Source of the DNA: Haliotis cracherodii
Lineage: Eukaryota
Reading direction: 5' to 3'
Length of the DNA stretch: 64,000 bases
NCBI RefSeq assembly: GCF_022045235.1
Contig: NW_027266286.1
Span: forward strand, 40,858,001-40,922,000
Translations under genes and position numbers: made by a program
Notes under the pieces: model-generated
What the model was told of the DNA's origin: nothing
What the model saw: only the letters and a program-made list of their open reading frames with translations
Databases searched by the model: none
In this document: one piece after another, positions 4,591-63,471 of the stretch
How the letters are laid out: each line of letters begins with the position of its first letter
How positions within the stretch are numbered: position 1 is the first letter of the stretch

Positions 4591-6763
4591 ATGGAGTCAG
4601 TTGTATGGAAATTCATTTGGACTGCCGTTAATGTGGCAGCATTAGCAGTATATTCTGGAAGAGGTAATATATGTTTTCTGGAACATTCTTTGACTTTGTC
4701 TCAAATTTTTCTACTGTTTGATCTTGTTAAATCTATATCATCTGCAACATTCGTCTGCCTCATGTACAAGATATCTGATGAAAGTTGGATTCATTTCAAG
4801 AAGGGTTATTCCCTCGTATTATCAACAAATACAAAATTCAAATGGTTTAATGTATGATTACTGGTAGCTCACAGGAGTGAAACAGTGTATGTGCAGATAT
4901 ATTCGAATATTGTCCTCTTGTTATTAATATCTGGGGAAACAAAAACTATATTTCATTATGTAATACTTGGGTGTCTTGTTGGTTTGGTTCCTAATGGAAA
5001 GAGCTGTATAGGCGCAATCATCTCGAACGCAAATTTAAACCCCATTTCACCCAAACCCCTACCTTCAGATAAGAATTCCTGATTTATCATTCGGATCTTT
5101 TGGACAGTACTGTCTTATACCTCTATAATCAAGACCACATTTTACTTATCTCTTCACTTATCTTGAACATTATTCTATTTTAGGGACCACAGCGCAAAGA
5201 CCATTTGCCTTTGCCAGTTACTATGGAAACCACATGGTTCTTCAACAAGCACCCCAAAGAACGATTATCTGGGGCTATGCTGCAAAACCAGGGGAGACAA
5301 TCACATTGAGCATTAGTGGTAAAGGGGAGGTGAACACAACATCCTTTAATGGACCTATGGCAACAACCCCTGTGTGGTCAGTTCAACTTCCTGCCATCGC
5401 TGCTGGTGGGCCTTACAACATCACAGCGACATCTAGCGAGGGCAGCATTGGCTTAACAGATGTGTTATTTGGGGACGTCTGGATATGTTCGGGTCAGAGC
5501 AACATGCAGTTTACAGTTTCAATGGTAGGTTGTAACATACACAGATATTGAACATGACCAGCAGACAGCATCTGATGACCTCATTGTTGTCTGCTGGTCA
5601 TGGTGATAACGTGTTTTACTGTAGCGGTGCCCTTGTGCCGATGATTTATTATAACTGCTCAGCAAGTGTCTCTTTAGTTGTTGTGAAAACATGAACCAAC
5701 GAGTTTTATTTTGGTTTGGTCTTGTGACACGTTGTTACAGTAATAGGTTCTCTTAACCCTAAGAACCTGGTTGAATAATAACCGATGATTCTAACTGCAG
5801 CTAACTCCTGGTGCCTCAGATTATAAGTCATAGTGTTAATGTGAAACAGTTCTTATGGGTTTTGCCAAAGTGATAAAGGTTTACAACCTAGTGTCATTTG
5901 GGTTTCAATCCCGCTTAAGCACACACACCATCACATACCTGAAGTCCTGTTCTTAGTGACCTGTTATCAAACTAACTCATTCGCTCTCTGAGTGTTCCAA
6001 GTGTTGTATAAATCAGTTATTCATGTTGTCTCCGACAGGGTTTCAATGCCACGGAAGAAGAGTTAGATGCCTTTAACCATCCCAATATCCGGGTATTCAC
6101 AGTTGCCTTGGGAGGGTCTCCTTTTGAAGAATATGATCTGTTGGGTATCAGTGAACCTTGGTCGGTTCCTAGTCCAGGTAAACACTTGCTATAGAGTTTC
6201 CTGGTCATACATTGCAACGTCATAATCCATTCATGAATATTACTTACACGCTCTCTGTGACAACATATCCTTCTATAAAACTTTCATTTTGAAATAAACA
6301 TATTCTCAAGTAATCTCAAAATAATACATGTATCATTTCCTCTCTGTAGTTCCGTAACTAGTGTACGCCTGCCTGACAAGTATGTCCCCTACGTTCCAAC
6401 TAGTTTTAACTCTCTTTATCTTCTTACATCAAGAGACCATTGGTGGTCCAGCTTGGTCGTACTTTTCGGATGTCTGCTGGTTATATGGCAAGTACCTGTC
6501 TTCGCATCTCAAATACCCCATCGGCCTCATTGCGACGTCATACGAAGGAACCCGAGTGGAGGCGTGGTCAGCTCCCAATGTTCTCAAGCAATGTGATGTA
6601 TACGATGTAAGCGCCATAAGCGATGACGCTGGTGATGTTTCTGGTGTAAATCCAAATGCTGATTCTGTTCTGTGGAATGCCATGATGCGACCTTTTCTCA
6701 ACATGACCATATATGGAGTCATATGGTATCAAGGTAAGAACCAAAATATATCAAATCTGATCT

Positions 6764-6819
<56 letters not shown>

Positions 6820-9593
6820 CGAAAATAATTTGCATCAATTTTTTGTTTTAGGCGAGTCTAATGACAAACCACCTTCATCAATGAACCGGTACAACTGTAC
6901 GTTCCCCGCCATGATTGATGACTGGAGAGATAGATTCCACCACGGTTCCGTTGGTCAAACCAACCCGCTTTTTCCCTTTGGATTTGTACAGGTAATCGTG
7001 CTTGTCTAACATGCATTTATTAACATCTTCTACGACTTTGTACAACTTAAAATGAATGTTACAATTGTTTCTGCTAATAATGTATGTAGAACTATTATTC
7101 CGAGCATCGACCCTTACAATACCAAACCAGGAAATAGTTTAGAATGTCAAAATGTGAAAACAATTAAATTATAATCCTTAATTGCCAGCCATAAGCTTTA
7201 GTTTATGAGAAGTTAGGTCACTGCAATGACTTGTCTTCCAATCAATTTACGGATCAGTATTTGGATTTGACTTTTGAGTCGTCATATTCATGCACAATAT
7301 TTGTGTCAAAGGAAGAATTTGTTGTCCATTGTCATTTTTATTCCTTCCATTCATATAATTTCCACAGCGGAATCTGTTTCGGTAGAAAATCCAGGCAAGT
7401 TATTATCTTGCATTGACAATTTTTATTCCTTCTTTCCTCAGCTTGCTCCAAGGCGAGACAATGTCGTCAGTACGACCGGCTTCACAGACATTCGGTGGCA
7501 CCAGACAGCTGACTATGGCTACGTCCCAAACGCCAGGATGAAGAACACCTTCATGGCGGTGGCCATGGACCTGCCGGACTTCTCGTCTCCTTGGCAAAGG
7601 TATCATAAATAATGTAAACCCAGTAAATAAATACTATTAAAAAAAGGTGGAATGTCTAACAATTTGTAATCCGTATTGTTGTACAAATGTTGTTTCATTT
7701 TCAGTAAACCCTCACACCATTTTAAGTAGTCCCTGACTGTGCCTTTCCCTATGTCTGTCATTTTAGACTCGGTCTTCTGGACACTGGCCTTAATATGTAA
7801 CAATCAGATAAGATATTGTGTGTTTTTCGATGTGCTTTCAGTATCCATCCCCGGGACAAGCAGGATGTGTCTATGCGTCTGTGTACAGCTGGACTTGCTG
7901 TGGCTTACAACCAAACTCACTACTCTACACTCAATGGCCCCTACCCATCTCATTTTACAATCTTGGCGCAGGAAGAAACCGTACAGATTACTTATGACAA
8001 AGTTCTGGAAATTAGATCGAAATCAGGCTTTGAGGTCAGTGACCATTGCTACTTCGTGTTTTTTCTTGCTTTTGTCAACCAAACAATTGTTATGTTTTTG
8101 CATATATTTCTCTGAGATGACCATTTTGTTGGTGTGTATTGCCATTAGGTAAATTGCGCACTGTCTGATGACGCGGAATCATTGGCTCTGGGTTCCATTC
8201 GCTTGTGACTTATTACGATATATAGGGAATACTTATATTTTCTTGTCAAATAGCATCTATATCTGATCTAGTGACCTGACAAAGATAAGTGGCGCGTGTA
8301 TCACAATAGTTAATATGTTACAATTATTACGTTACGACATTACAAAAGTTAATTATGCATTATGCACATGTATTTTCTAAATGATCTTCACTATCTTTCC
8401 ATGAAAAATAATTGTATCATTAAGACAGTCTGAAAGTTGTTCCAGATAAAGTGATATTTCATTGGAGTGATATATCGATGTAATATTTTCAGAATAATTC
8501 AATACTTCATGATTAAATAGACAATATCACTCTATCAATACCAAATAGGTATCAAACCAGCTGTTCGCAAAAGGGGAAGCGTATCCTGTCCCACATTTTT
8601 ATATACCCTTGCAAGGTTTTTAACAACTGGCATGTTCAAGTATGAGCGAAAAAGGTCGATTATTCTTCAAAAGAAAAATTAACTACATCTGTCCCCTGAG
8701 AAGATCTTGTTACCATACGTTTGAGTCTTTATCTGTATCTCCAACGAAAATTAGCTTGAGTCAAAGACTGGCTCATGTTCAAATAATAAAACTGAAAACT
8801 GAAAACCTCTAAAATCAGCTTTTTCCCACATTTAGTGTTATGTCCAAAACAAGCATCTGTCAACACTCGAGGTCTCATTCACGTGAACATATCTGATAAC
8901 ATTTTGCTAATTTCGAAACGTATGCGGACCCTTAAAGGGCAAAATATGACCTTTTTTAACCTGAGTGGTTTCGAGGGTGGTCATATTCGTCATATTCGTG
9001 TTCTACTGCGACACATATTGTGCGCGTCAAAAGCATCAACCCGTTTGTTCCTGTAGCAATGCTGGAAATACACCAATACCTTGCTACAGAATTGCTGAAT
9101 ACTTCGTGGGACCAGCAGTCCCTGTTCTGTGCCATCACTAAATGATGGCGTTTGAGAACTATCATCATGGTGTGTCTCCTGATCAAAGTTAATATGACAG
9201 ATGGTTAATGAAAAGTACACTCAGACAAATATTCATAAGTGATGAATCAACTGACGAGTAAACTGTTTGAATCAGAGACCTTTCATTTTTATTGATTAAG
9301 TTGTGATTTCTCTAGTTGTTGTGGTTGTTTTCCTTTAGGTGACATGTGTTAAATCCGACAGTTCATCACGACCAGATGATAATTCAGTATGGTTCCCCAT
9401 GCCTATTACTTCACACGACAACACATCAGTGACCCTCAACTACAGCCAACTATGTCTGCGATCTAGACACATGGTGGTGTCTGCAATACGGTACGCCTGG
9501 AGAGAGTCGCCCTGCCCCTTCAAACAGTGTGCTGTCTACAACAAGGACAGTGGATACCCAGGGCCACCTTTCATTCGACATGTTAAGCAATAA
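4591..9593 (+). CDS. SIAE: Sialate O-acetylesterase-like protein, tandem copy 1 (subfamily A), 8 exons, ~532 aa
   Basis: Exons join(4591-4663,5184-5524,6039-6177,6434-6733,6852-6991,7442-7599,7842-8034,9339-9593); all GT-AG and phase-compatible, 1599 nt in total. Signal-like N-terminus MESVVWKFIWTAVNVAALAVYSG. SIAE motifs: FASYYGNHMVLQ, GDVWICSGQSNM, LWNAM, IWYQGESN, YNCTFPAMIDDWR, IRWHQTADYGYVPN, TFMAVAMDL, SIHPRDKQ, RYAWRESPC. Confidence 0.9.
6769..6816 (+). repeat. (CA)n microsatellite in intron 4 of copy 1
   Basis: Direct reading. Confidence 0.95.
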
Positions 9594-11379: not shown

Positions 11380-14300
11380 ATGGGACCAACTGCCTGCGCA
11401 GTTCTCCTGATTACCATTGAGGTGGCCTTACTTACTGCAGGAGAAGGTAGGTTTTCTCAAGATCATAAGTTAGTTGTACGGACCACATGATAAATTGACA
11501 CCAAGTATTTGTGCATTCAATGATTGAACAAATTTTAACATTTGGTTGGAACCCCCCGTGATTTACACAAAAGTAGGGTCAGCTCTATTTGACTGTCATT
11601 TCGTGTCATATTTTAGTCCAAGTTGTTAAAACAGGTAAAGTTCTGTCGATATAACTACACAATAATATAGTACATTGTTCCACACTTGTGTTACAGTACG
11701 AAACGTGTTACGTCCGAACTGTGACACTGTCTGATAAACCTCTCTGACCCAAACCAAATCATCGTTATCTCCTTAAAGATATAACTATACAAGACTTCAT
11801 TTCATTGTTCTGAAGCGTCCAAAATCTGCATTACATTTCCTAAGGGTTAATATATTTCAGGGAACATAGATGTTAAAACATTCTCCTTTGCAAGTTTCTA
11901 TGGAAACTATATGCTTCTTCAAAATGCTGCCCAAAAGAAAATAATATGTCTGGTTTTACTGAACAACAAGGGAAAACATTCACATTGATATTTTATTGCA
12001 GAGGCCTTAAAAGCAAAATCATTCGCCTTTGCCAGTTACTATGGAGACCACATGGTTCTTCAACAAGCGCCTAGGAAAGCTGCAATCTGGGGATATGCTG
12101 CAAAACCAGGGGAGACAATCACATTAAGCATTAGTGGTAAAGGGGAGGTGAACACAACATCCTTTAATGGACCTATGGCAACAACCCCTGTGTGGTCAGT
12201 TCAACTTCCTGCCATCGCTGCTGGTGGGCCTTACAACATTACAGCGACATCTAGCGAGGGCAGCATTGGCTTAACAGATGTGTTATTTGGGGACGTCTGG
12301 ATATGTTCCGGTCAGAGCAACATGCAATTTACACTTTCGATGGTAAGTTTTTTAAAAAAATGACAATAAGTTAGTCGATATTTTAGACGCTTCTCCATGC
12401 GTAACTGGTAGTCAAGGTCGATGAAAACTAACTGGTTACATACTCAATTATGATGGTAAAATAAGTGGTTATAGGACTCAAATATGGTAAGGTAGTCAAT
12501 GAACAAAACGCAAATCTGATCTTAAACATGTTACAAAAGATTCTGACTTTAACCACAAGTAAAACAGGATGAGTGTCTCTGCTAACCTAAAACTTCTTTA
12601 TGGAACTGCAGATATGCTTGTTTTGAAAAGGTCATGTATTAATCGATGATTTATAACATTCTTGATCTTTCTTAACAAGGTCCCACAAGGCATCATTTAT
12701 AATTGAGTATAATCCATGCAGGCTTTAAATGCAACGGAAGAGATGGCAGATGTCCCCAACTATCCCAACATCCGGGTGTTTACAGTTGCCCTGGGAGGGT
12801 CTCCAGTCGAAGAATATGATCTGCTGAATATCAGTCAACCTTGGTCTGTTCCAAGTGCAGGTAGAACCAACAACTTCAGTGTTGCCAGGTCATGTGCAGT
12901 CGTTATATGTCAGCACCTTTTGTAAAAACATCAACATTTTGCTTCAAGTCTGTTTCAACAGTTCAACTTTGCTGCTGTCTTACAGATACACCATATGTCA
13001 CGACATCCCTTCTTGCATGATAATACTGAAGATTAATTAAAACAGTGTCAGCCTTCATCGCGTTCATCTTCCTACCATAATCACAATAATCAGGTTGCAA
13101 ACCACATTCAAAATGTAGTTTTATATTGGCATTTGACCATGAAGGTTCCTTTAGCCTTTATACTGCGATAGTGATATAGTCAGGGTGATACAGATATATT
13201 AATCGGCAGATGTCAATTTACGTTATTTTTTAATTTTAGTGGGTTTTTTTCTCCAAAATTCTAAATATTACGGCAACATTTCTTTCCTGACATCCAGCTA
13301 CTATAGGCGGTCCTGATTGGTCGTACTTTTCGGGAGTCTGCTGGTTATATGGCAAGTACCTGTCTTCACATCTCAAATACCCCATCGGCCTCATAGCATC
13401 ATCATACGGAGGAACCCGAGTGGAGGCGTGGTCAGCTCCAAATGTTCTCAAGAAATGTGGTGTAAGCGATGTGTCTGGTGTGAACCCGAACTCTGCTTCT
13501 GTTCTGTGGAATGCCATGATGCGACCCTTCCTCAACATGACCATATACGGAGCCATCTGGTATCAAGGTAAAAACTGTTACACATTAGACCTGTTGCCAT
13601 ATTCATCTATTTTAGTGGAATATTGTCTCACAAAATAGTATACATGTAGTACTTTTTAATATGGCTAAAGGAATATAGGTAAAAAATGCATAGTTCAGTG
13701 CTTACTTACAGAAAAAAGCAATTTCTAAATGGATATGCTCATGCTGACCTCAGCATCCCATGTATCGTGCATTCATGAAAATGTGGAGATTAATTCAAGT
13801 TCAACTAAAATCTGTCTAAATATGGAAAACCATTCACATAAACTCTTTACTTTCCCAGAAAGGGAATAATGCTGTGCTCTGATTTGTAACAGTGTATGAC
13901 TAACAACTTATCCCATTGTTAAACATTGATATCTCTCTCGGAAACGTATTTATTAATACGATTAGGTGCTCTAGGAAAGGTCGTTGTGAGCACGGTTACA
14001 AGAGGAGATACCAAGAGAATCCACGTTTCATTTACGGCAACCGAAATAAAGAAAACTTACCTAGTGTGACCGTCTCACTATCGGTTGCAAATATGCACGT
14101 ATAACAATAGGAACTTACTTCAATAGACATCACAATTATATTTTGATATGAATGAAATGATCTGGACACCCACCAATTTCTAACGTCCGATTTATGTAGT
14201 CAGCACGCTTGGGAAACGTGGAATAATTTCTACATTCTGAACGCCTACGTTGGAATTTAAGAGGGTCAAACTTTTAGGTCAATTAACAGATTACAAGTTG

Positions 14301-17300
14301 AACATTTTTCTGCAACAAGTTAAGGCGAGTACCACACCACCATTACATCAAACACTGAACCAGAACAGCTGTATGTTCTTTGCCATGATAGAGAGAGGTT
14401 CCGTTGAGGGACACTTGTAGACCAAACAATTGAGCAGAGAAACTGTGATGGATGATTCAAAGGAGCAACATACCACCTATAGACCAACAAATGGACCAGT
14501 ATATGATGTACTGTTTGATATGTGTATCAATGTTCTGTGACAAGGTGAAGCCAATGCCGGTTCTTCAACAATGAACCAGTACAACTGTACTTTCCCAGCC
14601 ATGATAGATGACTGGAGAGAGAGGTTCCACGAAGGATCAGAAGGACAAACAGACCCATCCTTTCCTTTCGGATTTGTTCAGGTAATATTCTCTCCTACTA
14701 TTACACATACCAAACTATCCCTCACAGATGCCTGAGGCTCTGTGTTTATATCATGACAAATCGTAGCATGTTGCTGTGTTTATCCGTGTGACAACAGACA
14801 GCTAGTCTATGTGATCTTTAGTATGATTTGATAACTGAATATGTTGCCAGCAATGATCTGATATAATTCAATAATGACTCCCTTCCACTGTCTGACACAT
14901 CTGAAACAGCTTTATCTCTTCATATTTATATCTGTGCAAAAAGACGGGTGGCCCCGTCTAAGTGTCATACCACACTTTCTCAAACGTTAGGTAACAACAT
15001 TCAAGGCGTCAGCAAAGCTATTAAAAAGTTTTATTTTCGCCATGTGTGAAGATCATATCCCAATGTGATGCATCAGTGACAAAAAGTATGTCCGATGCAA
15101 TTCCCTTATTTGACATGTACCTTATGTTCCCGTTGATTTTCATGTGAACAATTGACTTGCCTTGGCATACGTTTGTGACAGGCGCCACAAGTGGGGCAGG
15201 ATACGCTCACCTTTCCGACAGCACCTGGTACATTACGATCTTATTGTGATTCATAACACATGCAAATGATATAGTCGGAATCGTACAATGGGCTCTGCCA
15301 TTGGCAGATATTCCTTTTGATTACAGAGTTTTGGAAATGTTTTTGTTTCTTTTATTTGTATTTGCTTAAAATATAGGTCACACTGTCCCTTACAACACGT
15401 GAGTGGTTGATAAATAAAGTTATCAACACATTATCATTGTATAAGAATAACAGCTTTTCTTCATAAGTACCAATTCAAACAAAATTCAAATAATATTGGT
15501 TATTTAAAAAAAATTCTTTCATAATTTTTGTTTTGAAGATATTAAAATCTGCCCATACAGCTTGTTCGATGGAAAGGCAAACGTAAGCTGTTAGTACACT
15601 TTTCTTATCATTCATTATTTATAAGTTCTGTTAATATGTTTTTTTTGGTCGGTGCCATCCTGTAAATATACAGTTATTTCCATTCACTCGCTTGATTACA
15701 CTGAATAATGGTCGTTATGTTTTGAATGCAGCTTGCCCCATGGAGAAACAATGACACCATTACTACCGGCTTCACAGACATTCGATGGCATCAGACAGCT
15801 GACTATGGCTACGTCCCTAACGGCAGGATGAAGAACACCTTCATGGCGGTGGCCATGGACCTGCCGGACTTTACATCTCCATACACAGGGTATATAACTA
15901 TATCTTTTTATATTCTTGTATTTAAATAATATCTTTTTAAATTTAACTTATTCTTTTGAAAATGTTGTACATTTTATACAGTTGAATGTACTTTCAGTGT
16001 CCACCCCCGAGACAAGCAGGATGTGTCTATGCGTCTGTGTACAGCTGGACTTGCTGTGGCCTACAACCAAACTCAGTTCTCTACATTCGACGGACCCATT
16101 CCTGGTCTGTTCATAATCTACACCAAGCAAAGAACCATGGAGATAAACTTTTATAAAGACCTTGATATCAGATCAACAACCGGCTTTGAGGTCAGTGACC
16201 ATTGCTAATACATTATTGGGTTGGTCAACAGATTTTAGTTTATATTCAATATATATTTAGTCACAGACAATGTCGATAAACGCTATAGTGGGACAACATT
16301 CAAAGGTGTATTAAGTTGAACTCCTTCCACACATTGCTGCAAAGATGCAACATTTGTACTTTGATGCCACATGTACAATAATTCAACGGGTGGAGCTACA
16401 CATAATGCGCCAAGGGGGCGTGTCTGCACATCTCGGAGTGACAGTCCATCACGTGACACAGAAACTTTTGCAGGCACCTCACAGCTGCCAGACTCGGGCA
16501 TTGAACCCATAGCCTGCATGAAAACCTGTAACGACAATAAATCCAGCCCGGGGACCGATTGAGCAACGAAGGCTCTTGATATACAGTGTGTTCGTCTGTT
16601 CCATACTGAAGTTGGTTTCGCGCGGTAAACTTCAAATTCTAAAGATTTGATAGGGGTATTCAGAGTGTCAAGATGGATGTTTGGATATGTTGGCGTACGA
16701 ATAGGATGCGATCTAGGCATGGAGCTGACGCAAAGTAAGCTTCATTTTAAGTAATGATAAACAAAAGAGAACATGGCAGTTATGGAAGATTTTCGTAATG
16801 TCACAATAGATATTGATTAGTTCAAACAGCAAGTTTAAACACTGAAAGAGAAGAAGGTAATGTCTGTTGCATACAGGCTTCACTGCTACCCAAAAATGTG
16901 TCCTAATGTTTCTCTCAAAAATGTGAGTCAGTACAACACAACTTCTTCTGAAAGGTCAATTAAAGGTCAAATATCACAATACTGCAAAATTTGTTACGAA
17001 TGTTTAAGGCCCGATGCCGACTACCAATGATGGCCATGCACAATTATATTCGTGCAATAATTTCAAAAAGGGCTTACTTATAAGTTTTTCCTTGTGGTTG
17101 ACAAGGTGACCATGTTTATAAAATGGGATTCGAACATATCCTCAATTGTGGGCATGGGTGTGAAAAGTTTAAGATCAATTGGTCCAGTATTAGTGGGGAT
17201 ACAATCTGACTTTTTATTAACAGGGCCGTGCTACTCGTAACCACTCCTCGAAATATCTTGTGATACAACAACAAAGACTGTAATGCTGAGAGGTCCAGTG

Positions 17301-48600: not shown

Positions 48601-51600
48601 GGTCTCCCTGCAGCTACCTTGCGGCTGCCCTGTGTAACAGTAGCGTCAGTCTTGGCTCACGGTGGACGTATGGTCTCCCTGCAGCTACCTTGCGGCTGCC
48701 CTGTGTAACAGTAGCGTCAGTCTTGGCTCACGGTGGACGTATGGTCTCCCTGCAGCTACCTTGCGGCTGCCCTGTGTAACAGTAGCGTCAGTCTTGGCTC
48801 ACGGTGGACGTATGGTCTCCCTGTGCGTCATCACTTCAAAGGCCGTACAGCAGCCGCAGGTTTTAAAATACGGCATGCGGCTACCCTTACATATGTGACT
48901 GCTACAGTATGTTACCGTGGGAATGCTGCGGTGGCCCTATAATTGCTATTAGCTATAGATATTTTAGACCCAACGGCCGCCGCGGCAAATGTGACTGAGG
49001 CATTATCTGACTCCTATCTTCACTCCAATAATATTTACAACAGTTCACTGTCTATGATATATTTCCTGTCTAAACAAAGTTTTTGAGGGGATTCATGGAT
49101 CAGGTTCTGTCTGTGCATCATGTTTTATTTCTAGAGCTTATAAGCCATTCCATATTACTTAATTTATTAAGTAATATTAATTTATTAAGTAATAAGTAAA
49201 CAACTTGACCAAAGATACTGACTTGACATACATGTTCCCTCCATGATGAATGACACCCCAAATTGTTAAAGAGATCATGGCAACCATACCGAAAATCTGT
49301 TGATTTCCTTTACTCAACCATATTGGTACAAAATGTAATAAATTTTGGTACATGTATATAAGGTAGTAGGGAGCAACATATCTGTTGCGATATTTTACTT
49401 TTTTACCTTGATTTAATCTTTGAACTTACTGAAAGCTGAAACTTCTTATAGACGTTACTCAGACATTCTTGTTTAAAAATTAATGTTTTGTTGGTATTGG
49501 GGCTAACCACATATGTTCCGTTGTTTAAGTTATTTTAAACTTGAGTTTTATTTGACCATTGCACCTTGACCAGGCTCCAAAATTCTCTCAATTTCCTTTC
49601 CTTGTGCTGTAAATATAATCGCACTGGACCAATGAAACTGGGGAGCTGAACGTTGGCATGTATGTTCTTCTGCTGATGACATCATATATTGTTCCAATCA
49701 TCAGATTTTAAGTTCAAAGTATTCATGTACAAGACATCAAATCTAACAGCAACTTTTGTTAGGCTTAAAAAAATTAAAGAAATGGCTCTCAGGCAATGGC
49801 TTTTGAAAAATATAGTGCGGGTGGCCAGCCGGCCCTTTTTTTCGTTGACTGTTTTACCAAATAAACATTTGTGTGCAGTCACCTTGGGAAGGGCTCCCTA
49901 CATAAATGTATTCCTTGATGATTAAAATACTGGAATACAGTATTTGGTGCTGTTGTACAACCAGTGTGTGCATAATACACACATACAATGAGCTTTGATT
50001 TTACTTCACAATGCAAAAACATTATTGTGGGCTCACAACACTGGAAGAAGCATGTCGACAAATCCGTACTGAAGTACGCAAGTTACTCCTATTATTACAC
50101 TCTCTGGCTATAAAAGTGTTTATTGTGTGTCTGGATTTGCGTTTATATCCATTATATTACTTTTCTTCAAGATTTCATTCAAGTTTGTTGACATTACTTT
50201 TGGTGAAATTGTGCATCATCTGATTGGCAAATCACCGTGAACTCGCCTTTAAATGAACATTAAATACAAAGTCTTCGGTCTTCCTATCAATTTTGGTTTC
50301 AATTATGATACTGACCATGACATGGATGAAGTGTTTTTTAAATTGAATCACCCATAGAACTGGGAGAAAATGTGTAAACCGCTGATCGCTATTTCTGGTT
50401 TATTTTACGAGACAACTACACATGTAATCATATTCTCTGCGTTTGAAACAGTGTCCGCCATAGAAGTTCACAAATACCATTGAATTTGTAAATCATCATA
50501 TCTTCATAAAACAATAATCATGTTTTTATTGACCAAATTTGCAAACGGCAAAACAAGCACCAAAATATTGCCACTACGACGATAACATAATATTATAACA
50601 CGATATGTAAAGGGAAGTAACTGCACGCTTATATTGGAGCTTGTTGTTTCTAAGTATTGTAGCATTTCACTGCAAGGGTAATGTGTGTTCAACACCCGGA
50701 ATATTTAAGGATTTCTTTTGGGTAAATGAAAAAAAAAAAAAATGTGCGGTGGACTTATGTGATGATGCTGCAGTGCCTGAGAAGCAAGATTTTTCTTTTT
50801 TTAGTTTTAAGTGGCTTTCTTTGTTGAGATTTTACACTGTTGACTACATATCCAGATGAGCTACAGTGCCTGTAGCAGTATTTTCACATATAATCTTGTT
50901 TCTATTTCCCAGGGTCCATATTCGAGACAAGCCTGATGTTGCTAGGAGACTGTACCTCAGTGGACTGCGGGTGGCCTATGGCAAGGATGTCCTAGCTGAT
51001 GGCCCTCTTCCTAGTACTGTTGTTGATAACTCAACCCAGCTCATCTTGACTTACAAGGAAAAACTCCTGTACCGCAACCTGGAAGGATTCGAGGTGAGGG
51101 TGGGCTCAATGTTTACGGAATGTTCAGTTAATCTCGTAAGATCAGTCTCAGGTTTGTCTGATCCAGACTTGATTATTTAGAGGCCGCTGTCATACAGCTG
51201 GAATATTGCTGAGGTGGCGTCGAACAACAATCAAACAAAGTTAATGGTGTTTTTACAAGCAGCCTGAACTGAGGGACCGACTTCGTGGTCTAGTGGTAGA
51301 GCGTCTGCCTGGAGAGTGGAAGGTCCGGTTCGATCCCCGGCCACACCATCAACAACAATGGTACTTGTTGTTACCCTGCCTGGCGCTCGGCATTAAGGGG
51401 CTAAAACAAGGTCGGCTCAGAGTCAGGAGAATGTGTCTGAGTGGGGTATTCATGTTAAACTGTGGCATGGTATCTCAGTGAGCTAGCGCTATAAAATCGG
51501 CACTAGTCCGGACAGTGCAGCAGCCACACATACACACGTGCATGCACATTGCTATATATCTTGGACGCAACATAAAACCCCATTTCACCTCACCTGACCT

Positions 51601-52310
51601 GCACTGAGTGTCTTGTACTGAAACAAAGAAAAAGTAAACACATCATCCGTCGTTCATATCAATCTACACAAAAGAACATGCACAATATTGCAACAATTAT
51701 AAAACCCATTAAACTACAAAAACTTATCAGTAAAACTTGAGCTTCTCTGGTTGATTAATTCCATGATGTTCTCTTGAAAATGAAATATTACAACTAGTAG
51801 CTATTACACAAGCACCATAATGGCTGGACTGACAGAAAGACATGACTCTGCATTACGGTGTTTTGGCAATTGTCAAAAGACTGAATTTCAAATGGCAGCA
51901 TTCCGATTATGTATGTTAGGTATTTATAGAACCATTTTGAAAGTAAATTGAGAAGAATGCCAAAAATGTTTCTTGTGAACTGAGCTAGTTTTGTTTCACA
52001 TGGTGAGTTTATGTTTCAGGTACTGTGCTCTGAGCAGGGAACTAGCAAGACATTCTGGACCCCCACCCCCATCCTGTCTGCCCTCCCCACCAGCATCACA
52101 TTGTACTCCCTGGTGTGTGGGGAGGGGCAGACTGTCCTGGGGCTCAGATACAGCTGGAGGGAGTCCCCCTGCGCCTTCAAGACCTGCACGGTGTACTCGG
52201 CGGACAACCCTCTCCTCCCTGGACCTCCCTTCCTGGTGTACCGGAAGATGACTGGGGTAGCCGGGACCGTTCACACGATAGACTGGAACACTCCGACTGC
52301 CATTCCTTAA
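30607..52310 (+). CDS. SIAE: Sialate O-acetylesterase-like protein, tandem copy 4 (subfamily B), 9 exons, ~570 aa
   Basis: Exons join(30607-30745,36734-37080,37965-38103,39692-39890,41154-41272,42085-42224,43056-43213,50913-51093,52020-52310); 1713 nt, open frame. Signal peptide MGSIDFLVLHCVFLSLLLLTAAQA. Motifs GQSNM, FSAVCWLYG, SYGGTPIEAWS, WYQGENN, IRWHQTADYG, SVHIRDK, LRYSWRESPC. Confidence 0.9.
31987..34915. repeat. 47-bp minisatellite, ~62 copies, in intron 1 of copy 4
   Basis: Unit CTGACATGACCCAGCTGTGTCCCATCGGTCATCCCTCCCACATCTTG, with a few recurring variant positions. Confidence 0.98.
35302..35493. mobile_element. hAT-like MITE (TAGGGCTGGGA ends), internally deleted copy
   Basis: tagggctgggatgagtcc...gtcctggcccaa. 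The body (ggtacccaacccc, attaccggaccctaccc, aaaatgtctggttgggaattgttt) is shared with 42303-42703. Confidence 0.6.
36398..36592 (-). mobile_element. tRNA-derived Meta/MESC-like SINE, 5' part
   Basis: Reverse complement gaccgcctccgtggtctggttgtagagcatccacctggagagtggaaggtccggtgtttgatccc matches the head of the 51274 copy. Confidence 0.75.
37224..37378. other. Assembly gap (155 N) next to a (TG)-rich compound microsatellite
   Basis: Run of n in intron 2 of copy 4. Confidence 0.99.
37497..37778 (+). mobile_element. Meta/MESC-like SINE, 5'-truncated
   Basis: aaaaatggtacttgttgttaccc..ggcgctcggcatt..tctgagtggg..gcactataaaatc..tttcacctcacct, as in the 51274 copy. Confidence 0.75.
38480..39260 (+). 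mobile_element. Highly decayed Ty3/Gypsy-like gag/protease remnant in intron 3 of copy 4
   Basis: Fragments KWLSRFKRLLVALDIAADSQR, KLTESF..VNTAFELYYFRN and VIFYSGVSCEIMD (resembles a DSGAS protease motif). Family assignment is from pattern recall only. Confidence 0.45.
40527..40970 (+). mobile_element. Truncated second copy of the long-TIR MITE seen at 28849-29473
   Basis: catcttcccaaggcaagggagttaactgact...ccttgccgaactaggctggaatttc...ctgatcgataatcaa...cgcgaagtgcatcaaat. A third internal fragment lies near 63020-63170. Confidence 0.75.
42303..42703. mobile_element. hAT-like MITE (TAGGGCTGGGAC...GTCCCAGCC)
   Basis: Inverted termini, ACCCG-rich subterminal motifs and a body shared with 35302-35493. 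Confidence 0.65.
43245..49005. mobile_element. Non-autonomous TIR transposon whose interior is a 5.5-kb 71-bp tandem array
   Basis: Left end TAATGCCTCAGTTCCATTTGC (43245) and right end GCAAATGTGACTGAGGCATTA (49005) are inverted repeats matching at 19 of 21 positions. Confidence 0.8.
43290..48824. repeat. 71-bp tandem satellite, ~78 copies, intronic in copy 4 (between the exons ending 43213 and starting 50913)
   Basis: Unit GGTGGACGTATGGTCTCCCTGCAGCTACCTTGCGGCTGCCCTGTGTA(A/G)CAGTAGCGTCAGTCTTGGCTCAC. The ORF track repeats every 71 nt. Confidence 0.98.
51274..51597 (+). mobile_element. Full-length tRNA-derived Meta/MESC-like SINE with TSD
   Basis: A-box TGGTCTAGTGG, B-box GGTTCGATCCC, central tggtacttgttgttaccctgcctggcgctcggcattaaggg...tcagtgagctagcgctataaaatc and (CACCT)n tail. 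Flanked by cctg(a/c)actgag. Confidence 0.85.
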
Positions 52311-57751: not shown

Positions 57752-57785
<34 letters not shown>

Positions 57786-58082: not shown

Positions 58083-61000
58083 ATGAATTCACACATCACT
58101 TTCAGCTTGTCAGTGTTAGTCCTGTTGCTATGGGAGGCTTCGACAGCACAAAGTGAACATATTAATCGCATCTTTGAAGAGGAAGTTTCGAGCAAAGGTG
58201 AAAAAGCAAAACCCTTATTTATAGCTCGAAATAAAATTACCGTAATTGACGCAATTAGCGTTCCAGTCTGCGACATTCAGCGGTATAACCAGTCTGCACA
58301 TCTATGCATAACGTCCATCCAATCCAATACCAAAATAAACACTAGGCAGGGGACCTGTGTGTGTGTGTATTGTGTGTGTGTTAATTAGGACTGTATCCTA
58401 GGTATCAAGGTATAAGATTCTATAGAATTGTGTACCTTTATCTGGAAGTTGGCATTGCCACATGATAGTTGTTAGAAGCCCAAGTATATCTTGTACCTTT
58501 TTCAACACATCTAACATCGCTGTAAAATTACAGAGCAAGTTGAACCAATTGTTCAACCAATAATACACTTATATATATTTATCCATAAGTAATGGTAATC
58601 TTTATTGACAAATAAAACATCATGAGTAAAACATGGCAGCACTTCCAGGTTACATCAAAACATGCCTATCATTGTTGGATTAAAGGAATCTGCTCACAAT
58701 AAGCTAAACTAGCTTGAGGTGAGAGTGGCCCTTTGTTGTTTTTGTGAAGTGGACAGACTAAATAGTGACTGCTGCCTAATAAGGTACATGCATCCTGTAC
58801 ATAATTTGTCACAATTGTAATCAATCATTGCTGGTAAAATACATTTCAATTTGTCATCATATGCACATGTTGTGTTCTCAATTCCTCGTGTATGCAATCA
58901 TATTGCTATTTCTCCATAATTCTGTTACTTGATCTGTCTGGATGTGGATGCCTCTCTATCTTGAAGTTACCAAACAGTCCCGCTGTGTTCCAGATAACAC
59001 GGTTCGACTGTATAGTTTTTAATGTATGCACAAACTTTTGATATTATTTTCAGCCAATAAGTCATCAGCTGAAGATCCCAGCATCTTGTTCGCCTCCTAC
59101 TATGGGAATCACATGGTTCTACAAAGGGCACCGAAACAGGCAGTCATCTGGGGGTACTCACCAAACATCGGAGAGGTCATCAAGGTCAAGGTGGAAGGTC
59201 AGGAGACAGTGTCAGCCACAGTTTACAAGGACAACATCTATGGTGTCGGCATCTGGAAGGTGACCTTGCCCCCAGTGTCCCAGCCAGGACCGTTTACAAT
59301 CACAGCTTCATCAGCCTTGGAGGCAATCACCCTGACTGATGTCCTGTTTGGGGATGTCTGGATCTGCTCAGGCCAGTCCAATATGCAGTTCACTGTTGAC
59401 AAGGTGAGTTCCGATTAAAGGGTGCTTGTAAAAAACCTTTTACAGTTCTTCCCAAAATATTAAACAGAGGTTTCCTTGTGTTTCCATTGGCTACCAAACA
59501 AAATACTTTAGCTTTAAGGCCAAAATGACAAATTCTGAGGACTTATTGGCATGCAACTAAGTATGGATTATGTTGTGTAATGCCACATCTTTAGAACAAT
59601 CAGTTCAGAATTCCCATTTGTAAACAGCACTGAAAAATTACTGTCTGGCTATACATTTCCCAGAAACAACCACTGTTCAGTCAAAGCTGCATGGGGACAC
59701 AACATTCCGTGGTTGGCTGGTATTGTTTTGCTACAGGAAAGTACTATAGTAGAGTTATTAGTCTGCCAGACAAGTGATTGAGTAACTGCAACACTGCATG
59801 TGTGTGTGTCCCTTCAGATATTCAATGGCTCTGCTGAACTGGCTGATGCTGCCAACTATCCTCACATTCGTCTGTTTGATGTCTCTCTCAAGTATTCTCC
59901 TGTAGAAACACTGGACCTACTCTCCATCAATGAGGGCTGGACACTACCAAGCAAAAGTAAGAATTCCCACATAGATAAGTACATATGTATATGTGAGAAT
60001 TATTGATTATTTTATTTTATGAAACTATGTTTAAAATAGACATGAAACAATATTTGTCATTAAGAACTTGTTTGTTTCTTTGTTGTTTAATGCCGCACTC
60101 AGCAATATTCCAGCTATATGACGACAGCCTGTAAATAATCGAGTATGGACCAGACAATCCTATGATTGACATCATGAGCATCGATCCATGCAATTGGGAT
60201 ACGATGACATGCATCGACCAAGTCAGCAAGTCTGACCACCCGATCCCGTAAGACTCCTCTTTCAACAAGCATAGTCTCCTGTTATGGCAGTCATGGGTTG
60301 CTGAAGACCTATTCTCTACCCGGACCTTCACAGGTCCAGTAAGAATTTGAGTTCTATATATTACAATATATTGTAATAGGTCAAAACAAACATTGTATTG
60401 GTATAACAATATGTCACTGTTTGTATTCTTATTCATACATGATTGTGATGATTTTTTTAGAGGCATTTAGAAGTTGGAGTACTAAGTAAGGATAAGATTC
60501 ATGGATGAACAACTTCTTTATTACAGTTAGGAGCGACGCTTCAGTCTAGGTTCTGACACTGTTATCGGGCACTTATGATTGTGATGGCTAATTTTTATAA
60601 TGATGACAAAATGGAAGTGAAGTTTAAACAAACATTTGTGCAGGACAAATGGACAGGTCTTGTTCAAATATCTTCGAAAAGCATGGGCGTGAGGACAGCT
60701 GGTGACTGTTGTTACTGCTACGATGTTCAACATGCTACCTTTGACGGTTGTAATGAGGATGCTGGATTTGATTGTGTTGTTGATGATGGTGATGATGATT
60801 CATTAAAGTTACTTGCTCCTAATTCTTGTGTCGTCACATCTCACAATAGTTGAGTCACGATAAGATATGTATCAGTTTCCATAAAAAGTGCCATTTTTGC
60901 ATAACTTTTCCCATGTTCCATGTGGCCAAGGTCACCCAAAGTCTTATATCAGTTTGGTCAGTTTGAGTTTAATACTACTAACGTCTGTCTGTCTCTAGGG

Positions 61001-63471
61001 ACACTAGCTGATGGTACTGGAGTGTATTTCTCCGCGGTGTGCTGGTTGTATGGCAAATATCTCTACCAGGAACTTGGATATCCGATTGGATTGATCGACA
61101 CGTCGTACGGCGGAACCCCCATCGAGGCCTGGTCATCAAGAGATGCCTTAGGCCAGTGTGGACTTTCCTCTACAGAGATTGTGGAATCCTTCATGCACAT
61201 GTATGAGAATATTTATAGAAATATGTCTACTGTTGCTATATTGATATTATTAAGATCAAGGTTGGATTAGGGATCTTTTTTTGACCACTGGTTATGTCAA
61301 ATATTAGAGTTATGTAATACTTTAAAATGTACATATGAAAATCACAAAAGGTTTTCAAACGACTGAGAGCTGTTTGTCTCAATTAGACATGTAACATTTT
61401 GACTTCTGACTTCTGAGGTGAAATGGGGTTTAACGTTGCAACAAAGACTATTGCACTTACATAGCGACATGCGTGCATGCGTGTATGAATTATTGTTTAC
61501 AAAAATGCTTACAATTCATATGTATTTAATATTCAGTTTTTCCATATATTAACTTGCATGATTTGCAAAAGGGATTTCTTTGACAATAATTTTCATTCTC
61601 TTTCGCATATACAAAATTGTAAAAAATCTGTACATCAAAAGAAAATAATAAGAATTTGCCACAAGTCACAAGTGTGTAGTGACTATTGTCAGCATCACTG
61701 TTTCCCCCTCAGTGATGACGGTGAGAGGGACACACCTGGCTACAGGAACCAGCTCACCCCTACCCAGCTGTGGAACTGCATGATCCACCCTCTACTCAAC
61801 ATGACCATATATGGAGCCATCTGGTACCAAGGTACTGTTAGGTTTGTCATACATATCCACATGCTGAGTATGTCGGATCAGCAGATAACAATTTAGCCAT
61901 GGAGTATGGCCTAGTTGGATATATAGAGGTTATCACACAACTTTGTTAGGGGATGATAATATCCTGTGTTAGGAATAAACATTGTATTTAGCAAGCCTTG
62001 GCGCTCTAAATACATAGTGTTTATTCCTAATACAGGATATTTACCAATAATTAAATTTTCGTTGTGTTCATGGAAATTCCTGCATTCTGATTAGCTGAAT
62101 TGGTCACGTGTTATTGCATTCATTTCCCAATGAATGTAAAAAATTAAGCCACGCCCACCGCTGCACACTACTTTTATTACTGCGGAATGTCGGGGAATCC
62201 CAATATTACAGTCGAGGGAATTCCCTTTCTGCTCACGTGTATCGTCATGCAGAGGACATTTAGCGACTTTCATGCATATTCATTGTCCAAACTACCCTTT
62301 GAAACCGAAGGCCGAGAATGAATGAAACATCAAACGTGCAGGCTCGCTCGCCAGTTTTTTTTCCTGCTCGCCTCGGTTGAACTTTCATGTCTTCGCGTTT
62401 CATTTCTAACTAGCATTTCTCCAACTGTTTTACCGTAATCAGAGAAGTAATGTTTGAATCACGCAGTAAATGACCATGTTATTTGAAACAGCCGCCTTCT
62501 CTCGGACATATTTCTTCCGGTTCGTTACAGTCTGACTGTTGCAAGTCTTTTCGCCTCTTGCCTTAATTGACAGGTCCAATGAACATTGTTTTAATCCCAC
62601 TCTCCGTTGATTGGCTACTGACTGTGTAGGCGTGTCAAGTTATGTGCATAAATTAAACGATCACCTGATTCATGTCACGCCACTGTATGTATTCCTACAC
62701 CTGGAATGTTCATCAATGCCGTCATTTTTGTCTGTTTTGAAATATGCAACTGTTTGGGGTTAAACTATTGTAGATAAAACATGTTTTACGTTTAATTATA
62801 AGCATTGACTGTGTATTTTTTTCGGTTCATTGAGGTCGAAAAACCGATGTGCAAACTGTATGAATCCGCGTAGCACAATCAATCCTTAATTGGCTTTATC
62901 CTCCCGAAAAACCTATCCATTATATGAGAAACAGAAATTATTAGCTGAGCGTGTTTCCGTATCATAAATGTCATGTACATGTATGAGGAATAGGACTTGT
63001 ATCATATGTGAGCACTACTTGAGCACCTGAATTGGAAACATGAAAAGATTTGCAAAATATCTGTCAATGCCCAGTTGGTAGTACACATGCTTTGCAAATC
63101 CTTCAACCTGAGATCTGTGTTGTTTGTGAACTGGATTTATGGTTCGTCACACAATTTTGATTGGACTCTGCAGGATGGCCTCGGGAGGATGGGTTATAAG
63201 TTATTTTACACCTGTAGTTCACCAGTGTGGGCAGGGAATGGATGGTTCTTGAGTCATTTTGTATCCAGTGGGTTATAAAGCACAGTTTAATGAATCGGAA
63301 TATTAAGAATTTTCCATACCGTCCCATGCAGGAGAGAACAATGCCATGCCTGGCGCCAACACCCACAAGTACAACTGCACCTTCCCTGCCATGATCTCAG
63401 ACTGGAGACTCAAGTTCAACCAGGGCTCACTCGGACAGACTGACAAACTTTTCCCTTTTGGATTTGTTCAG
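58083..63471 (+). CDS. SIAE: Sialate O-acetylesterase-like protein, tandem copy 5 (subfamily B), 3'-partial (continues past window end)
   Basis: Exons join(58083-58197,59054-59403,59818-59956,60999-61200,61713-61831,63332-63471); frame open. Signal-like MNSHITFSLSVLVLLLWEASTA. Motifs GQSNM, SYGGTPIEAWS, WYQGENN, FPFGFVQ. The last three exons are expected beyond 64000. Confidence 0.9.
60071..60336 (-). mobile_element. V-domain (RUDI-like) SINE with TSD, in intron 3 of copy 5
   Basis: Reverse complement starts GACCTGTGAAGGTCC. Flanked by ca(t/g)taagaa(c/t)ttg at 60058-60070 and 60337-60349. Confidence 0.85.

What the first reader, a model, noticed from the sequence alone, without database searches (positions are those of the whole stretch)
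4591..63471. Tandem array of at least five intact, signal-peptide-bearing SIAE-like O-acetylesterases in a probable mollusc
Seen: five co-oriented paralogs. Four are complete with open spliced frames; all have a signal exon, GQSNM and several N-x-S/T sequons. Known: SIAE is a single-copy SGNH esterase in mammals that removes O-acetyl groups from sialic acid, and the same SASA fold includes CE6 carbohydrate acetylesterases. Inference: sialylation is generally sparse in protostomes, so a maintained five-gene expansion suggests a new role. Candidates are a secreted deacetylase battery acting on dietary algal or bacterial O-acetylated polysaccharides, or on microbial nonulosonic acids. This is the best candidate for an undescribed system in the window.
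Basis: partly seen in the sequence, partly recalled or inferred. Interest (0 to 1): 0.8.

Follow-up and report, generated by a model that had tools for sequence, protein, structure and literature searches.

The report
Abalone tandem SIAE-like acetylesterase genes
The window holds five real, intact genes for secreted sialic-acid-type O-acetylesterases in black abalone. They belong to a family of about 26 copies on one chromosome. The genes are already annotated, but the family's size and its substrate in a mollusc have not been described.

Summary
Five co-oriented, multi-exon SIAE-like genes lie at 4591-63471. Four are complete in the window. The fifth runs off the window end, and its last three exons lie just beyond, all open.

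All splice sites are GT-AG with conserved phases. RNA contigs from four studies confirm five junctions, in copies 1 and 2. Copies 1 and 3 are 100% identical over their full length to RefSeq proteins named "sialate O-acetylesterase-like [Haliotis cracherodii]". So the organism is black abalone and the genes are already annotated.

The N gap lies in intron 2 of copy 4, and no coding sequence is missing there.

The array is far larger than five. There are 26 loci, about 22 of them apparently intact, all on one 76.8-Mb chromosome. They fall into three old subfamilies that have orthologues in other Haliotis species and other gastropods.

Pairwise dN/dS is about 0.32-0.37. Uneven per-exon dS points to gene conversion. 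The catalytic residues are kept, except that copy 1 has YEGT in place of YGGT.

The "new role" is plausible, because the literature reports that molluscs lack sialylation genes, but it is untested. Multi-copy SIAE arrays are common in molluscs. This is a new member of a known kind, of moderate interest. The scan had not noted this family elsewhere.

The parts
4591..9593 (+). Copy 1 (c1). It has 8 exons: 4591-4663, 5184-5524, 6039-6177, 6434-6733, 6852-6991, 7442-7599, 7842-8034 and 9339-9593 (with the stop codon). The protein is 532 aa. Block II reads YEGT instead of YGGT, and there is a 10-aa acidic loop insertion.
   Evidence: The model was built. It is 100% identical over its full length to RefSeq P0237. 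Four junctions are confirmed by RNA contigs. Pfam SASA scores 43.4 bits against a cut-off of 24.8.
11380..17904 (+). Copy 2 (c2). It has 8 exons: 11380-11446, 12002-12342, 12722-12860, 13298-13567, 14545-14681, 15732-15889, 15998-16190 and 17629-17904. The protein is 526 aa.
   Evidence: The model was built. The junction of the signal exon with exon 2, at 11446/12002, is seen in an RNA contig. The protein is 83% identical to H. rubra P0248.
11851..11985 (+). A partial duplicate of the start of exon 2 (translation ...FSFASFYGNYMLLQNAAQKK...), lying in intron 1 of c2. It is a pseudo-exon and is not in the model.
   Evidence: It appeared in the ORF listing. It is separated from the real exon 2 by a stop codon.
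20157..28588 (+). Copy 3 (c3). It has 8 exons: 20157-20232, 21584-21924, 22421-22559, 23297-23566, 24226-24362, 26071-26228, 26331-26532 and 28298-28588. The protein is 537 aa.
   Evidence: The model was built. It is 100% identical over its full length to RefSeq P0225. P0225 aligns to the solved vertebrate SIAE 8f9q at E 5.8e-127, residues 33-530 against 13-502.
30607..52310 (+). Copy 4 (c4). It has 9 exons: 30607-30745, 36734-37080, 37965-38103, 39692-39890, 41154-41272, 42085-42224, 43056-43213, 50913-51093 and 52020-52310. The protein is 570 aa. There is an acidic stretch after the signal peptide.
   Evidence: The model was built. It is 88% identical to its H. asinina orthologue P0227, with only 3 gap columns. 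Transcription of this copy was not tested.
31990..34915 (.). A 47-bp satellite of 62 copies, G+C-rich, inside intron 1 of c4.
37224..37378. An assembly gap (N) inside intron 2 of c4, next to a TG-rich degenerate repeat.
   Evidence: No coding sequence is missing, judged by comparison with the orthologue. The gap was not filled.
43290..48823 (.). A 71-bp satellite of 78 copies with 96% matches, inside the intron between the exons at 43056-43213 and 50913-51093 of c4.
58083..63471 (+). Copy 5 (c5), exons 1 to 5 by homology: 58083-58197, 59054-59403, 59818-59956, 60999-61200, 61713-61831 and 63332-63471. The gene continues beyond the window. Its exons 6-8 lie at about window-equivalent 65205-65354, 65652-65831 and 66840-67145 (G000:C23:40923205-40925145).
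   Evidence: The model was built. The outside exons were found in L003 with open frames. The in-window part is 86% identical to H. asinina P0232 from residue 1.

Best explanation
The window is a 59-kb segment of a large, old, tandemly duplicated family of SIAE-type O-acetylesterase genes in the black abalone, Haliotis cracherodii. SIAE-type means the SASA/CE6 branch of the SGNH hydrolases.

Each gene has a separate first exon that encodes a signal peptide. After that comes an end-to-end homologue of vertebrate sialate O-acetylesterase. It has three parts: an N-terminal beta-rich part, the SGNH catalytic domain, and a C-terminal part.

The catalytic machinery is kept. This covers the nucleophile Ser in GQSNM with its neighbouring Gln, the Thr five residues later, the (Y)QGE block III, and the His in (I/V)H(P/I/F)RDK.

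The proteins are therefore expected to enter the secretory pathway as N-glycosylated enzymes and to hydrolyse O-acetyl esters on sugars.

Shown here:
- The genes are intact.
- Copies 1 and 2 are transcribed and correctly spliced.
- The family has 26 loci on one chromosome, in three subfamilies that predate the splits between Haliotis species.
- The paralogues evolve under purifying selection and exchange patches by gene conversion.

Inferred: secretion, esterase activity and substrate.

My best guess for the substrate is O-acetylated glycans that the animal meets from outside, that is, dietary algal or biofilm polysaccharides and microbial surface sugars including nonulosonic acids. I rank endogenous sialoglycans lower, because molluscs are reported to lack the sialylation pathway. 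This last step is not tested.
For: - Motif count: 5 against 0.06 expected.
- Models are open and GT-AG.
- c1 equals P0237 and c3 equals P0225, both RefSeq "sialate O-acetylesterase-like [Haliotis cracherodii]". Both sit on a contig of 76,751,615 bp, which is the length of C23.
- RNA contigs from four studies skip the introns exactly at five predicted junctions. Depth is high on exons and nil between the genes.
- Pfam SASA scores above its cut-off.
- P0225 against the solved SIAE 8f9q gives E 5.8e-127 over the full length. Single exons give 1e-21 to 1e-27.
- GQSNMQFT, WYQGE and the block V His are present in all five copies. These match the human essential residues S127, T132 and H377 (PMC8319020) and the SASA-defining Gln and (H)QGE (PMC9487903).
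- All 27 exon-2 matches and 28 exon-8 matches in the genome lie on C23. The 26 loci were mapped exon by exon.
- dN/dS is 0.32-0.37.
- Orthologue pairs with H. asinina and H. rubra are well supported.
- PMC5811610 reports loss of the sialylation machinery in molluscs.
- Human and zebrafish SIAE are secreted glycoproteins (PMC8319020).
Against: - No enzyme assay and no tissue data were available.
- Signal peptides were judged by eye only.
- Transcription of c3, c4 and c5 was not tested with reads. c3 does have a RefSeq model.
- About 48% identity to vertebrate SIAE argues for conserved, possibly sialate-specific, chemistry.
- Sialic-acid-binding lectins stain connective tissue in H. tuberculata (PMC3356765), so endogenous sialic acid is not excluded.
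- My own search for GT29, NeuB and CMAS genes in the genome was uninformative. The same kind of search missed every SASA gene.
- c1 carries Glu in block II and may not be a normal enzyme.
Confidence: 0.8

Rival explanations
1. These are ordinary endogenous sialate O-acetylesterases. The paralogues all remove 9-O- or 4-O-acetyl groups from the abalone's own sialoglycans in the Golgi, the lysosome or at the cell surface. They differ only in where and when they are expressed (subfunctionalisation).
For: - Full-length similarity of about 48% identity to vertebrate SIAE.
- All catalytic residues conserved.
- A signal-exon gene plan like that of mammalian SIAE (PMC8319020).
- SNA and MAA lectin staining in abalone connective tissue (PMC3356765).
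- Sialic acid reported on a pearl-oyster glycan (PMC8699351).
Against: - PMC5811610 reports loss of GT29 sialyltransferases and of sialic acid synthesis and uptake in molluscs/Lophotrochozoa.
- Mammals, which are rich in O-acetyl sialic acids, manage with one gene. Abalone keeps about 22 apparently intact ones.
- No sialic acid was detected in abalone foot epithelium (PMC3356765).
Confidence: 0.25
2. The array is an assembly artefact. On this view haplotype copies or collapsed and expanded repeats inflate one or two genes to five, and copy 4 is stitched together across the N gap from unrelated pieces.
For: - There is a gap directly after exon 2 of c4.
- Exon 2 of c4 and exon 2 of c5 are 98% identical in DNA.
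- Two long satellites sit in c4 introns.
Against: - Similarity between copies is limited to exons, and introns do not align.
- Protein identity between copies is 48-82% and dS is 0.29-0.45 or saturated.
- The 98% patch ends at the exon border, 142 bp before the gap.
- c4 and c5 each have their own orthologue in H. asinina.
- c4 aligns to P0227 with no gap at the exon 2/3 junction.
- c1 and c3 match separate RefSeq proteins.
Confidence: 0.02
3. Part of the family has left catalysis. Some members would be pseudoenzymes or glycan-binding proteins, acting like lectins for O-acetylated sugars, rather than esterases. Copy 1 is the in-window candidate.
For: - c1 has YEGT in place of the conserved YGGT of block II, plus a 10-aa acidic insertion.
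- The Glu is shared with the H. rubra orthologue P0283 but not with the sister paralogue g02. So it is retained rather than a sequencing error.
- c1 is transcribed with that codon unchanged.
- Locus g16 has GQTDM, with Ser replaced by Thr.
- Snails have lectins for 9-O-acetyl sialic acid (PMC8699351, its reference 91).
Against: - 25 of 26 loci keep GQSNM. Most also keep the block V His: it was found at 24 of 26, and missed at g16 and in the HSPs of g02.
- Which of the two Gly residues forms the oxyanion hole was not established here.
- A backbone NH can still serve when the side chain changes.
Confidence: 0.15

Closest known systems
Vertebrate sialate O-acetylesterase (SIAE; solved structures 8f9o-8f9r)
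   Same: - End-to-end homology: E 5.8e-127, about 48% identity, residues 33-530 against 13-502.
- GQSNMQ(F/M)T with the Ser and Thr, the (Y)QGE block and the block V His.
- A separate exon encoding the signal peptide.
- Many N-glycosylation sequons.
   Different: - SIAE is a single gene in mammals. Abalone has 26 loci on one chromosome, in three subfamilies.
- Copies 4 and 5 carry an acidic N-terminal extension and an extra intron.
- Copy 1 has YEGT.
- The host lineage is reported to lack sialyltransferases, so the natural substrate may differ.
SIAE-like genes of other molluscs (Biomphalaria, Bradybaena, Candidula, Physella, Aplysia, Patella, Lottia, Mytilus, Liolophura and others)
   Same: They belong to the same family and the same subfamilies. 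Several of these species also have multiple copies, some adjacent on one contig, for example BsWGS_12744-12752 and SNE40_018484-018487.
   Different: Among the named proteins in the two hit lists, no other species had more than about eight. I could not census the other genomes exhaustively.
Bacterial sialate O-acetylesterases of the same fold (E. coli NanS; Bacteroidota enzymes 7kmm, 9ega, 9h4u)
   Same: They have the SASA-type catalytic domain and an N-terminal domain. Matches reach E 1e-28 to 1e-40 over the first ~200 residues.
   Different: They are much more distant. They have other C-terminal parts, and they serve sialic acid foraging.
Plant and bacterial CE6/SASA acetylxylan esterases (At4g34215, Fibrobacter Axe6A/B)
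   Same: They share the SASA block I Gln and the (H)QGE oxyanion arrangement. They are precedents for SASA enzymes acting on non-sialic O-acetyl polysaccharides in organisms without sialic acid (PMC9487903).
   Different: They were not detected as close relatives here. The abalone proteins are clearly of the animal SIAE type.

Membership tests
SASA / CE6 (Pfam PF03629) | Match to the family profile above the curated cut-off | tested here: met
   P0237 (identical to c1) scores 43.4 bits and P0225 (identical to c3) scores 44.5 bits, against a cut-off of 24.8. Single exons fall below the cut-off.
SASA / CE6 (Pfam PF03629) | Block I G-Q-S-N, with the Gln next to the nucleophile Ser (PMC9487903) | tested here: met
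   GQSNM is present in all five window copies and in 25 of 26 loci in the genome.
SASA / CE6 (Pfam PF03629) | Block III (H)QGE motif (PMC9487903) | tested here: met
   WYQGE, split by an intron after the first base of the Gly codon (GT follows directly), is present in c1-c5.
SASA / CE6 (Pfam PF03629) | Block II Gly and block V His | tested here: met
   c2-c5 have YGGT and c1 has YEGT. The His is present in all, within (I/V)H(P/I/F)RDK. Whether c1's Glu replaces the oxyanion-hole Gly itself was not resolved.
Animal sialate O-acetylesterase (SIAE) orthologue group | Full-length colinear similarity to characterised or solved vertebrate SIAE | tested here: met
   P0225 against 8f9q: E 5.8e-127, residues 33-530 against 13-502. 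In the tree the abalone genes sit inside the animal SIAE clade.
Animal sialate O-acetylesterase (SIAE) orthologue group | Equivalents of human S127, T132 and H377 (PMC8319020) | tested here: met
   The equivalents are the S and T of GQSNMQFT and the block V His. All are present in all five copies.
Animal sialate O-acetylesterase (SIAE) orthologue group | Secretory-pathway glycoprotein with a signal peptide on its own exon | tested here: inconclusive
   Exon 1 encodes Met, a hydrophobic core and small residues in all five copies. The exon 1/2 junction is shown by RNA for c2 and by RefSeq identity for c1 and c3. There are 7-11 sequons in the complete proteins. No signal-peptide predictor or localisation data were available.
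Animal sialate O-acetylesterase (SIAE) orthologue group | Hydrolysis of 9-O- or 4-O-acetyl groups of sialic acids | not testable with these tools
   This needs recombinant enzyme assays.
Animal sialate O-acetylesterase (SIAE) orthologue group | Presence of the endogenous substrate pathway (NANS, CMAS, GT29, CASD1) | tested here: inconclusive
   Pfam-profile searches of the genome gave no hit. The same method missed all 26 SASA loci. The literature reports loss in molluscs (PMC5811610).

The most novel reading that the evidence does not exclude
In an animal lineage that has lost sialylation, abalone has kept and multiplied the SIAE scaffold into about 22 apparently intact secreted esterases. 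These would work as a digestive and/or defensive deacetylase battery. Their targets would be foreign O-acetylated glycans: kelp fucoidan and other algal polysaccharides, biofilm exopolysaccharides, O-acetylated bacterial capsules, nonulosonic acids or peptidoglycan. The three subfamilies, and variants such as copy 1 (YEGT), would have diverged in substrate or have become binding proteins.
Probability: 0.3. Interest if true: 0.6.

Novelty: new member of a known kind. Interest (0 to 1): 0.38.

Why it matters
SIAE is studied almost only as the single mammalian enzyme that trims O-acetyl groups from sialic acids and tunes B-cell signalling. A herbivorous mollusc is reported to lack sialyltransferases. 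If it nevertheless maintains about two dozen secreted SIAE paralogues under purifying selection, the ancestral or main job of this enzyme family in animals may not be endogenous sialic acid turnover.

The family then becomes a testable source of carbohydrate esterases for marine polysaccharides, or of anti-microbial glycan-editing enzymes. For abalone biology, black abalone being an endangered kelp grazer, it adds a candidate set of digestive or immune genes.

As it stands, this is an annotated gene-family expansion without functional data.

Tried and rejected
- Pfam scans of single exons gave sub-threshold or no SASA hits. I replaced them with scans of the identical full-length RefSeq proteins.
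- A Pfam-profile search of the whole genome for SASA found none of the 26 loci. The same kind of search for GT29, NeuB and CTP_transf_3 also found nothing, so those negatives are uninformative. I had no tool-given protein of those families to use as a query.
- I considered assembly or haplotype duplication and rejected it.
- For c4 I first considered a phase-2 acceptor at 36708 paired with poor donors. I rejected it in favour of the acceptor at 36733/36734 and the donor at 30746, which keep the phase-1 pattern of the family and match the H. asinina orthologue.
- Ten literature searches found no paper on an SIAE expansion in molluscs. The hits on vent-snail "SIAE" concern gut bacteria. The last search was too loose and gave nothing useful.
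- I built a mixed alignment of full-length proteins and exon pieces (A1) but did not use it for a search, because a profile built from it would be poor.
- I did not run structure prediction, because the sequence match to solved SIAE structures is already decisive.
- The joined spliced models were never typed or sent to any search tool. They were assembled only inside scripts, by coordinates, for translation, local comparison with proteins already fetched, dN/dS and trees. Database searches used single exons or the database proteins P0008 and P0225.
- The N gap was not filled.
Full report
**What is in the window.** A pattern coding for GQSNM occurs five times, all on the + strand, against 0.06 expected by chance. 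Around each site lie conserved open frames that together cover a whole SIAE-type protein.

I placed the splice sites by requiring GT-AG, a continuous frame and the same intron phase in all copies. This gave five models:
- c1: 4591-9593, 8 exons, 532 aa.
- c2: 11380-17904, 8 exons, 526 aa.
- c3: 20157-28588, 8 exons, 537 aa.
- c4: 30607-52310, 9 exons, 570 aa.
- c5: from 58083 to the end of its exon 5 at 63471.

The last three exons of c5 are open and lie 1.2-3.1 kb past the window end (locus L003). The finding's coordinates are exact: 4591 is the ATG of c1, and 63471 is the last base of c5 exon 5.

**Independent support for the models.** A word search with a database homologue returned proteins named "sialate O-acetylesterase-like [Haliotis cracherodii]". 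They sit on a contig of 76,751,615 bp, which is exactly the length of the window's contig C23.
- c1 is 100% identical over all 532 residues to P0237, and c3 over all 537 residues to P0225. This fixes the organism as black abalone and shows that the genes are already annotated in RefSeq. An earlier scan note had also called this genome black abalone, and I confirmed that independently.
- Contigs of four public runs from four studies, laid on 6400-12399, skip the introns with GT..AG ends exactly at 6733/6852, 6991/7442, 7599/7842 and 8034/9339 in c1. They also skip at 11446/12002, the junction of the signal exon of c2 with its exon 2.
- Depth is high on exons, low or nil in introns, and nil between the genes. 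So c1 and c2 are transcribed and spliced as modelled.
- c4 and c5 are supported from their first exons onward by 88% and 86% identity to annotated H. asinina proteins.

**The assembly gap.** The N run at 37224-37378 starts 143 bp after the exon-2 donor of c4 and ends 586 bp before exon 3. It sits inside a TG-rich degenerate repeat.
- Exon 2 of c4 is 98% identical in DNA to exon 2 of c5. That patch stops at the exon border, and the flanks do not align. So the left side of the gap is not a misplaced copy of c5.
- The c4 protein aligns to its orthologue P0227 with gaps only at residues 27-29 and none at the exon 2/3 junction at residue 162. No coding sequence is missing and the frame is continuous.
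- Physical continuity of the DNA cannot be proved here.

**What the proteins are.** Single exons match solved vertebrate SIAE structures (8f9o-r) at E 1e-21 to 1e-27.
- The full-length P0225 (identical to c3) aligns at residues 33-530 to residues 13-502 of 8f9q, with E 5.8e-127.
- Pfam SASA is passed at 43-48 bits against a cut-off of 24.8.
- All five copies keep GQSNMQFT, WYQGE and the His in (I/V)H(P/I/F)RDK.
- These are the counterparts of human S127, T132 and H377, whose mutation inactivates SIAE (PMC8319020). They are also the Gln and (H)QGE features that define SASA/CE6 enzymes (PMC9487903).
- Block II is YGGT in c2-c5 and YEGT in c1.
- Each protein starts with a hydrophobic signal-like segment on its own exon. 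The four complete proteins have 7-11 N-x-S/T sequons; the in-window part of c5 has 4.
- Human and zebrafish SIAE are secreted glycoproteins, and mammalian SIAE also uses a separate signal-peptide exon (PMC8319020). Secretion of the abalone proteins is inferred, not shown.

**The array is much larger than five.** Exon 2 of c1 finds 27 matches in the 1.18-Gb genome and exon 8 finds 28, all on C23. I fetched the other loci and mapped them exon by exon. There are 26 loci:
- 12 between 40.835 and 41.08 Mb. These are the five window genes, three upstream and four downstream.
- 7 at 57.51-57.66 Mb.
- 3 at 69.24-69.27 Mb, plus one at 69.80 Mb.
- 1 at 38.9 Mb.
- 2 at 32.27 Mb.

About 22 loci have all core exons open with GQSNM; the block V His was found at 24 of the 26. 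The exceptions are:
- g10 (32.270 Mb) is a pseudogene with several stops.
- g21 (38.9 Mb) has a stop in exon 6, and its exon 6-7 unit is triplicated.
- g16 (57.577 Mb) has GQTDM, and no exon 5 was found.
- In g06 (69.253 Mb) I found no exon 3.

**Evolution.**
- Within the window there are two subfamilies, c1-c3 and c4-c5. They are about 50% identical in protein, with saturated dS between them. Within a subfamily, identity is 76-82%.
- Pairwise dN/dS is 0.32-0.37 (Nei-Gojobori). That indicates purifying selection, though not strong.
- dS per exon is very uneven. Examples are c2/c3 exon 4 at 0.065 against exon 8 at 0.78, and c4/c5 exon 2 at 0.087 against exon 3 at 1.8. This is the signature of gene conversion between neighbours, and it makes the dS values unreliable as clocks.
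- In trees with other species (quick search, SH-aLRT support only) the abalone loci form three groups inside a lophotrochozoan clade. One holds c4, c5, g03 and g04, together with limpet, caenogastropod and heterobranch genes. One holds c1-c3, g01, g02, g05-07 and g11 and is abalone-only in my sample; g21 lies just outside it, grouped with limpet genes. The third holds the 12 remaining loci, together with a chiton, Gigantopelta and a Mytilus gene.
- c4 pairs with H. asinina P0227 (support 97), c5 with P0232 (99) and c3 with H. rubra P0233 (99). c2 groups with P0248 and P0222. The pair c1+g02 groups with P0231 and P0283. Most duplications therefore predate the splits between Haliotis species, and the copies have been kept since.

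The two hit lists show several distinct SIAE-like proteins in many molluscs, some adjacent on one contig:
- Biomphalaria glabrata, at least 7.
- Bradybaena similaris, BsWGS_12744-12752.
- Candidula and Physella, several each.
- Aplysia, 3 on one contig.
- Patella caerulea, SNE40_018484-018487.
- Liolophura, 4.
- Mytilus, Mya, Mercenaria and Dreissena, more than one each.

Amphioxus also has several. In the representative search, several predicted proteins contained two to four SIAE units, which are fused tandem genes. Among the named proteins in those two lists, no other species had more than about eight, but I could not census other genomes. I found no paper describing this expansion in ten full-text searches, the last of which was too loose to be useful. 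Biomphalaria papers mention SIAE-like genes only as differentially expressed items.

**Function.** The chemistry, an SGNH-type Ser/His esterase removing O-acetyl groups from sugars, follows from the conserved residues and the full-length homology. The substrate is open.
- Petit et al. (PMC5811610) report that GT29 sialyltransferases and the sialic acid synthesis and uptake systems were lost in molluscs/Lophotrochozoa.
- A mollusc glycan review notes the lack of sialic acid in Mytilus digestive cells, but a sialic acid on a pearl-oyster glycan (PMC8699351).
- In H. tuberculata, sialic-acid lectins do not stain foot epithelium but do stain connective tissue (PMC3356765).
- SASA enzymes of plants, which have no sialic acid, are thought to act on acetylxylan (PMC9487903).

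Taken together, I rank foreign O-acetylated glycans (diet, biofilm, microbes) above endogenous sialoglycans as substrates. This is inference, and the high similarity to vertebrate SIAE cuts the other way. My attempt to look for sialylation genes in the genome with Pfam profiles was uninformative, because the same approach misses the SASA genes themselves.

**Handling of sequences.** Spliced models were joined only inside scripts by coordinates. Database searches used single exons or database proteins.

**Verdict.** It is a maintained, transcribed family of secreted SIAE-type esterases in a mollusc, but it is a piece of a 26-locus, already annotated family of a kind that is commonly multi-copy in molluscs. 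The "new role" is an open and testable idea, not a result.

Noticed in passing
window 6544-6546 (c1 exon 4): Block II of c1 reads YEGT instead of YGGT. The Glu is also present in the H. rubra orthologue P0283. It is absent from the closest paralogue g02 and from all other loci. RNA contigs covering the site show no difference there. c1 also has a 10-aa acidic loop insertion.
   Followed up: partly
window 43290-48823 and 31990-34915: Two long, homogeneous satellites sit inside introns of c4: 71 bp x 78 copies with 96% matches, and 47 bp x 62 copies with 95% matches. Variant units of the 71-bp array recur at regular intervals, which suggests a higher-order repeat.
   Followed up: no
window 36766-37082 vs 59089-59405; 13296-13685 vs 23295-23684; 42075-42248 vs 63322-63495: These are patches of 95-98% DNA identity between paralogues whose other exons are 70-88% identical. 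The patches end at or near exon borders, which indicates gene conversion tracts.
   Followed up: partly
window 11851-11985: A partial duplicate of the start of exon 2 lies in intron 1 of c2. It is out of frame with the real exon.
   Followed up: no
window 52222-52383 vs 52314-52475: A short tandem duplication (90% identity) of the 3' end of c4's last exon lies just after the stop codon. The same feature is seen at locus g03.
   Followed up: no
window 24508-25032 (-), 57298-57630 (+), 18217-18900 (+): These are transposon remnants. The first is the tail of a non-LTR reverse transcriptase, in intron 5 of c3. The second is a gypsy-type RT/RNase H fragment upstream of c5. The third is a mariner-like transposase fragment between c2 and c3.
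   Followed up: no
L017 (G000:C23:41070500-41080499) and L025-L027 (G000:C23:38908500-38937700): Locus g13 has its last exon three times at 2,045-bp spacing. Locus g21 has the exon 6-7 unit three times at about 4.5-4.7-kb spacing, each with the same in-frame stop.
   Followed up: no
window 12335-12343 joined to 6432-6453 in RNA contigs (table 5): Contigs in all four runs join a c2-like end of exon 2 to a c1-like start of exon 4, with unknown letters in between. They may come from a paralogue outside the laid stretch, from a converted allele, or from assembler chimeras between paralogues.
   Followed up: no
c2, window 11380-17904: No H. cracherodii protein matching c2 appeared in the two hit lists, although c1, c3 and six other paralogues did. 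c2 may be unannotated or modelled differently in RefSeq, even though its exon 1/2 junction is seen in RNA.
   Followed up: no
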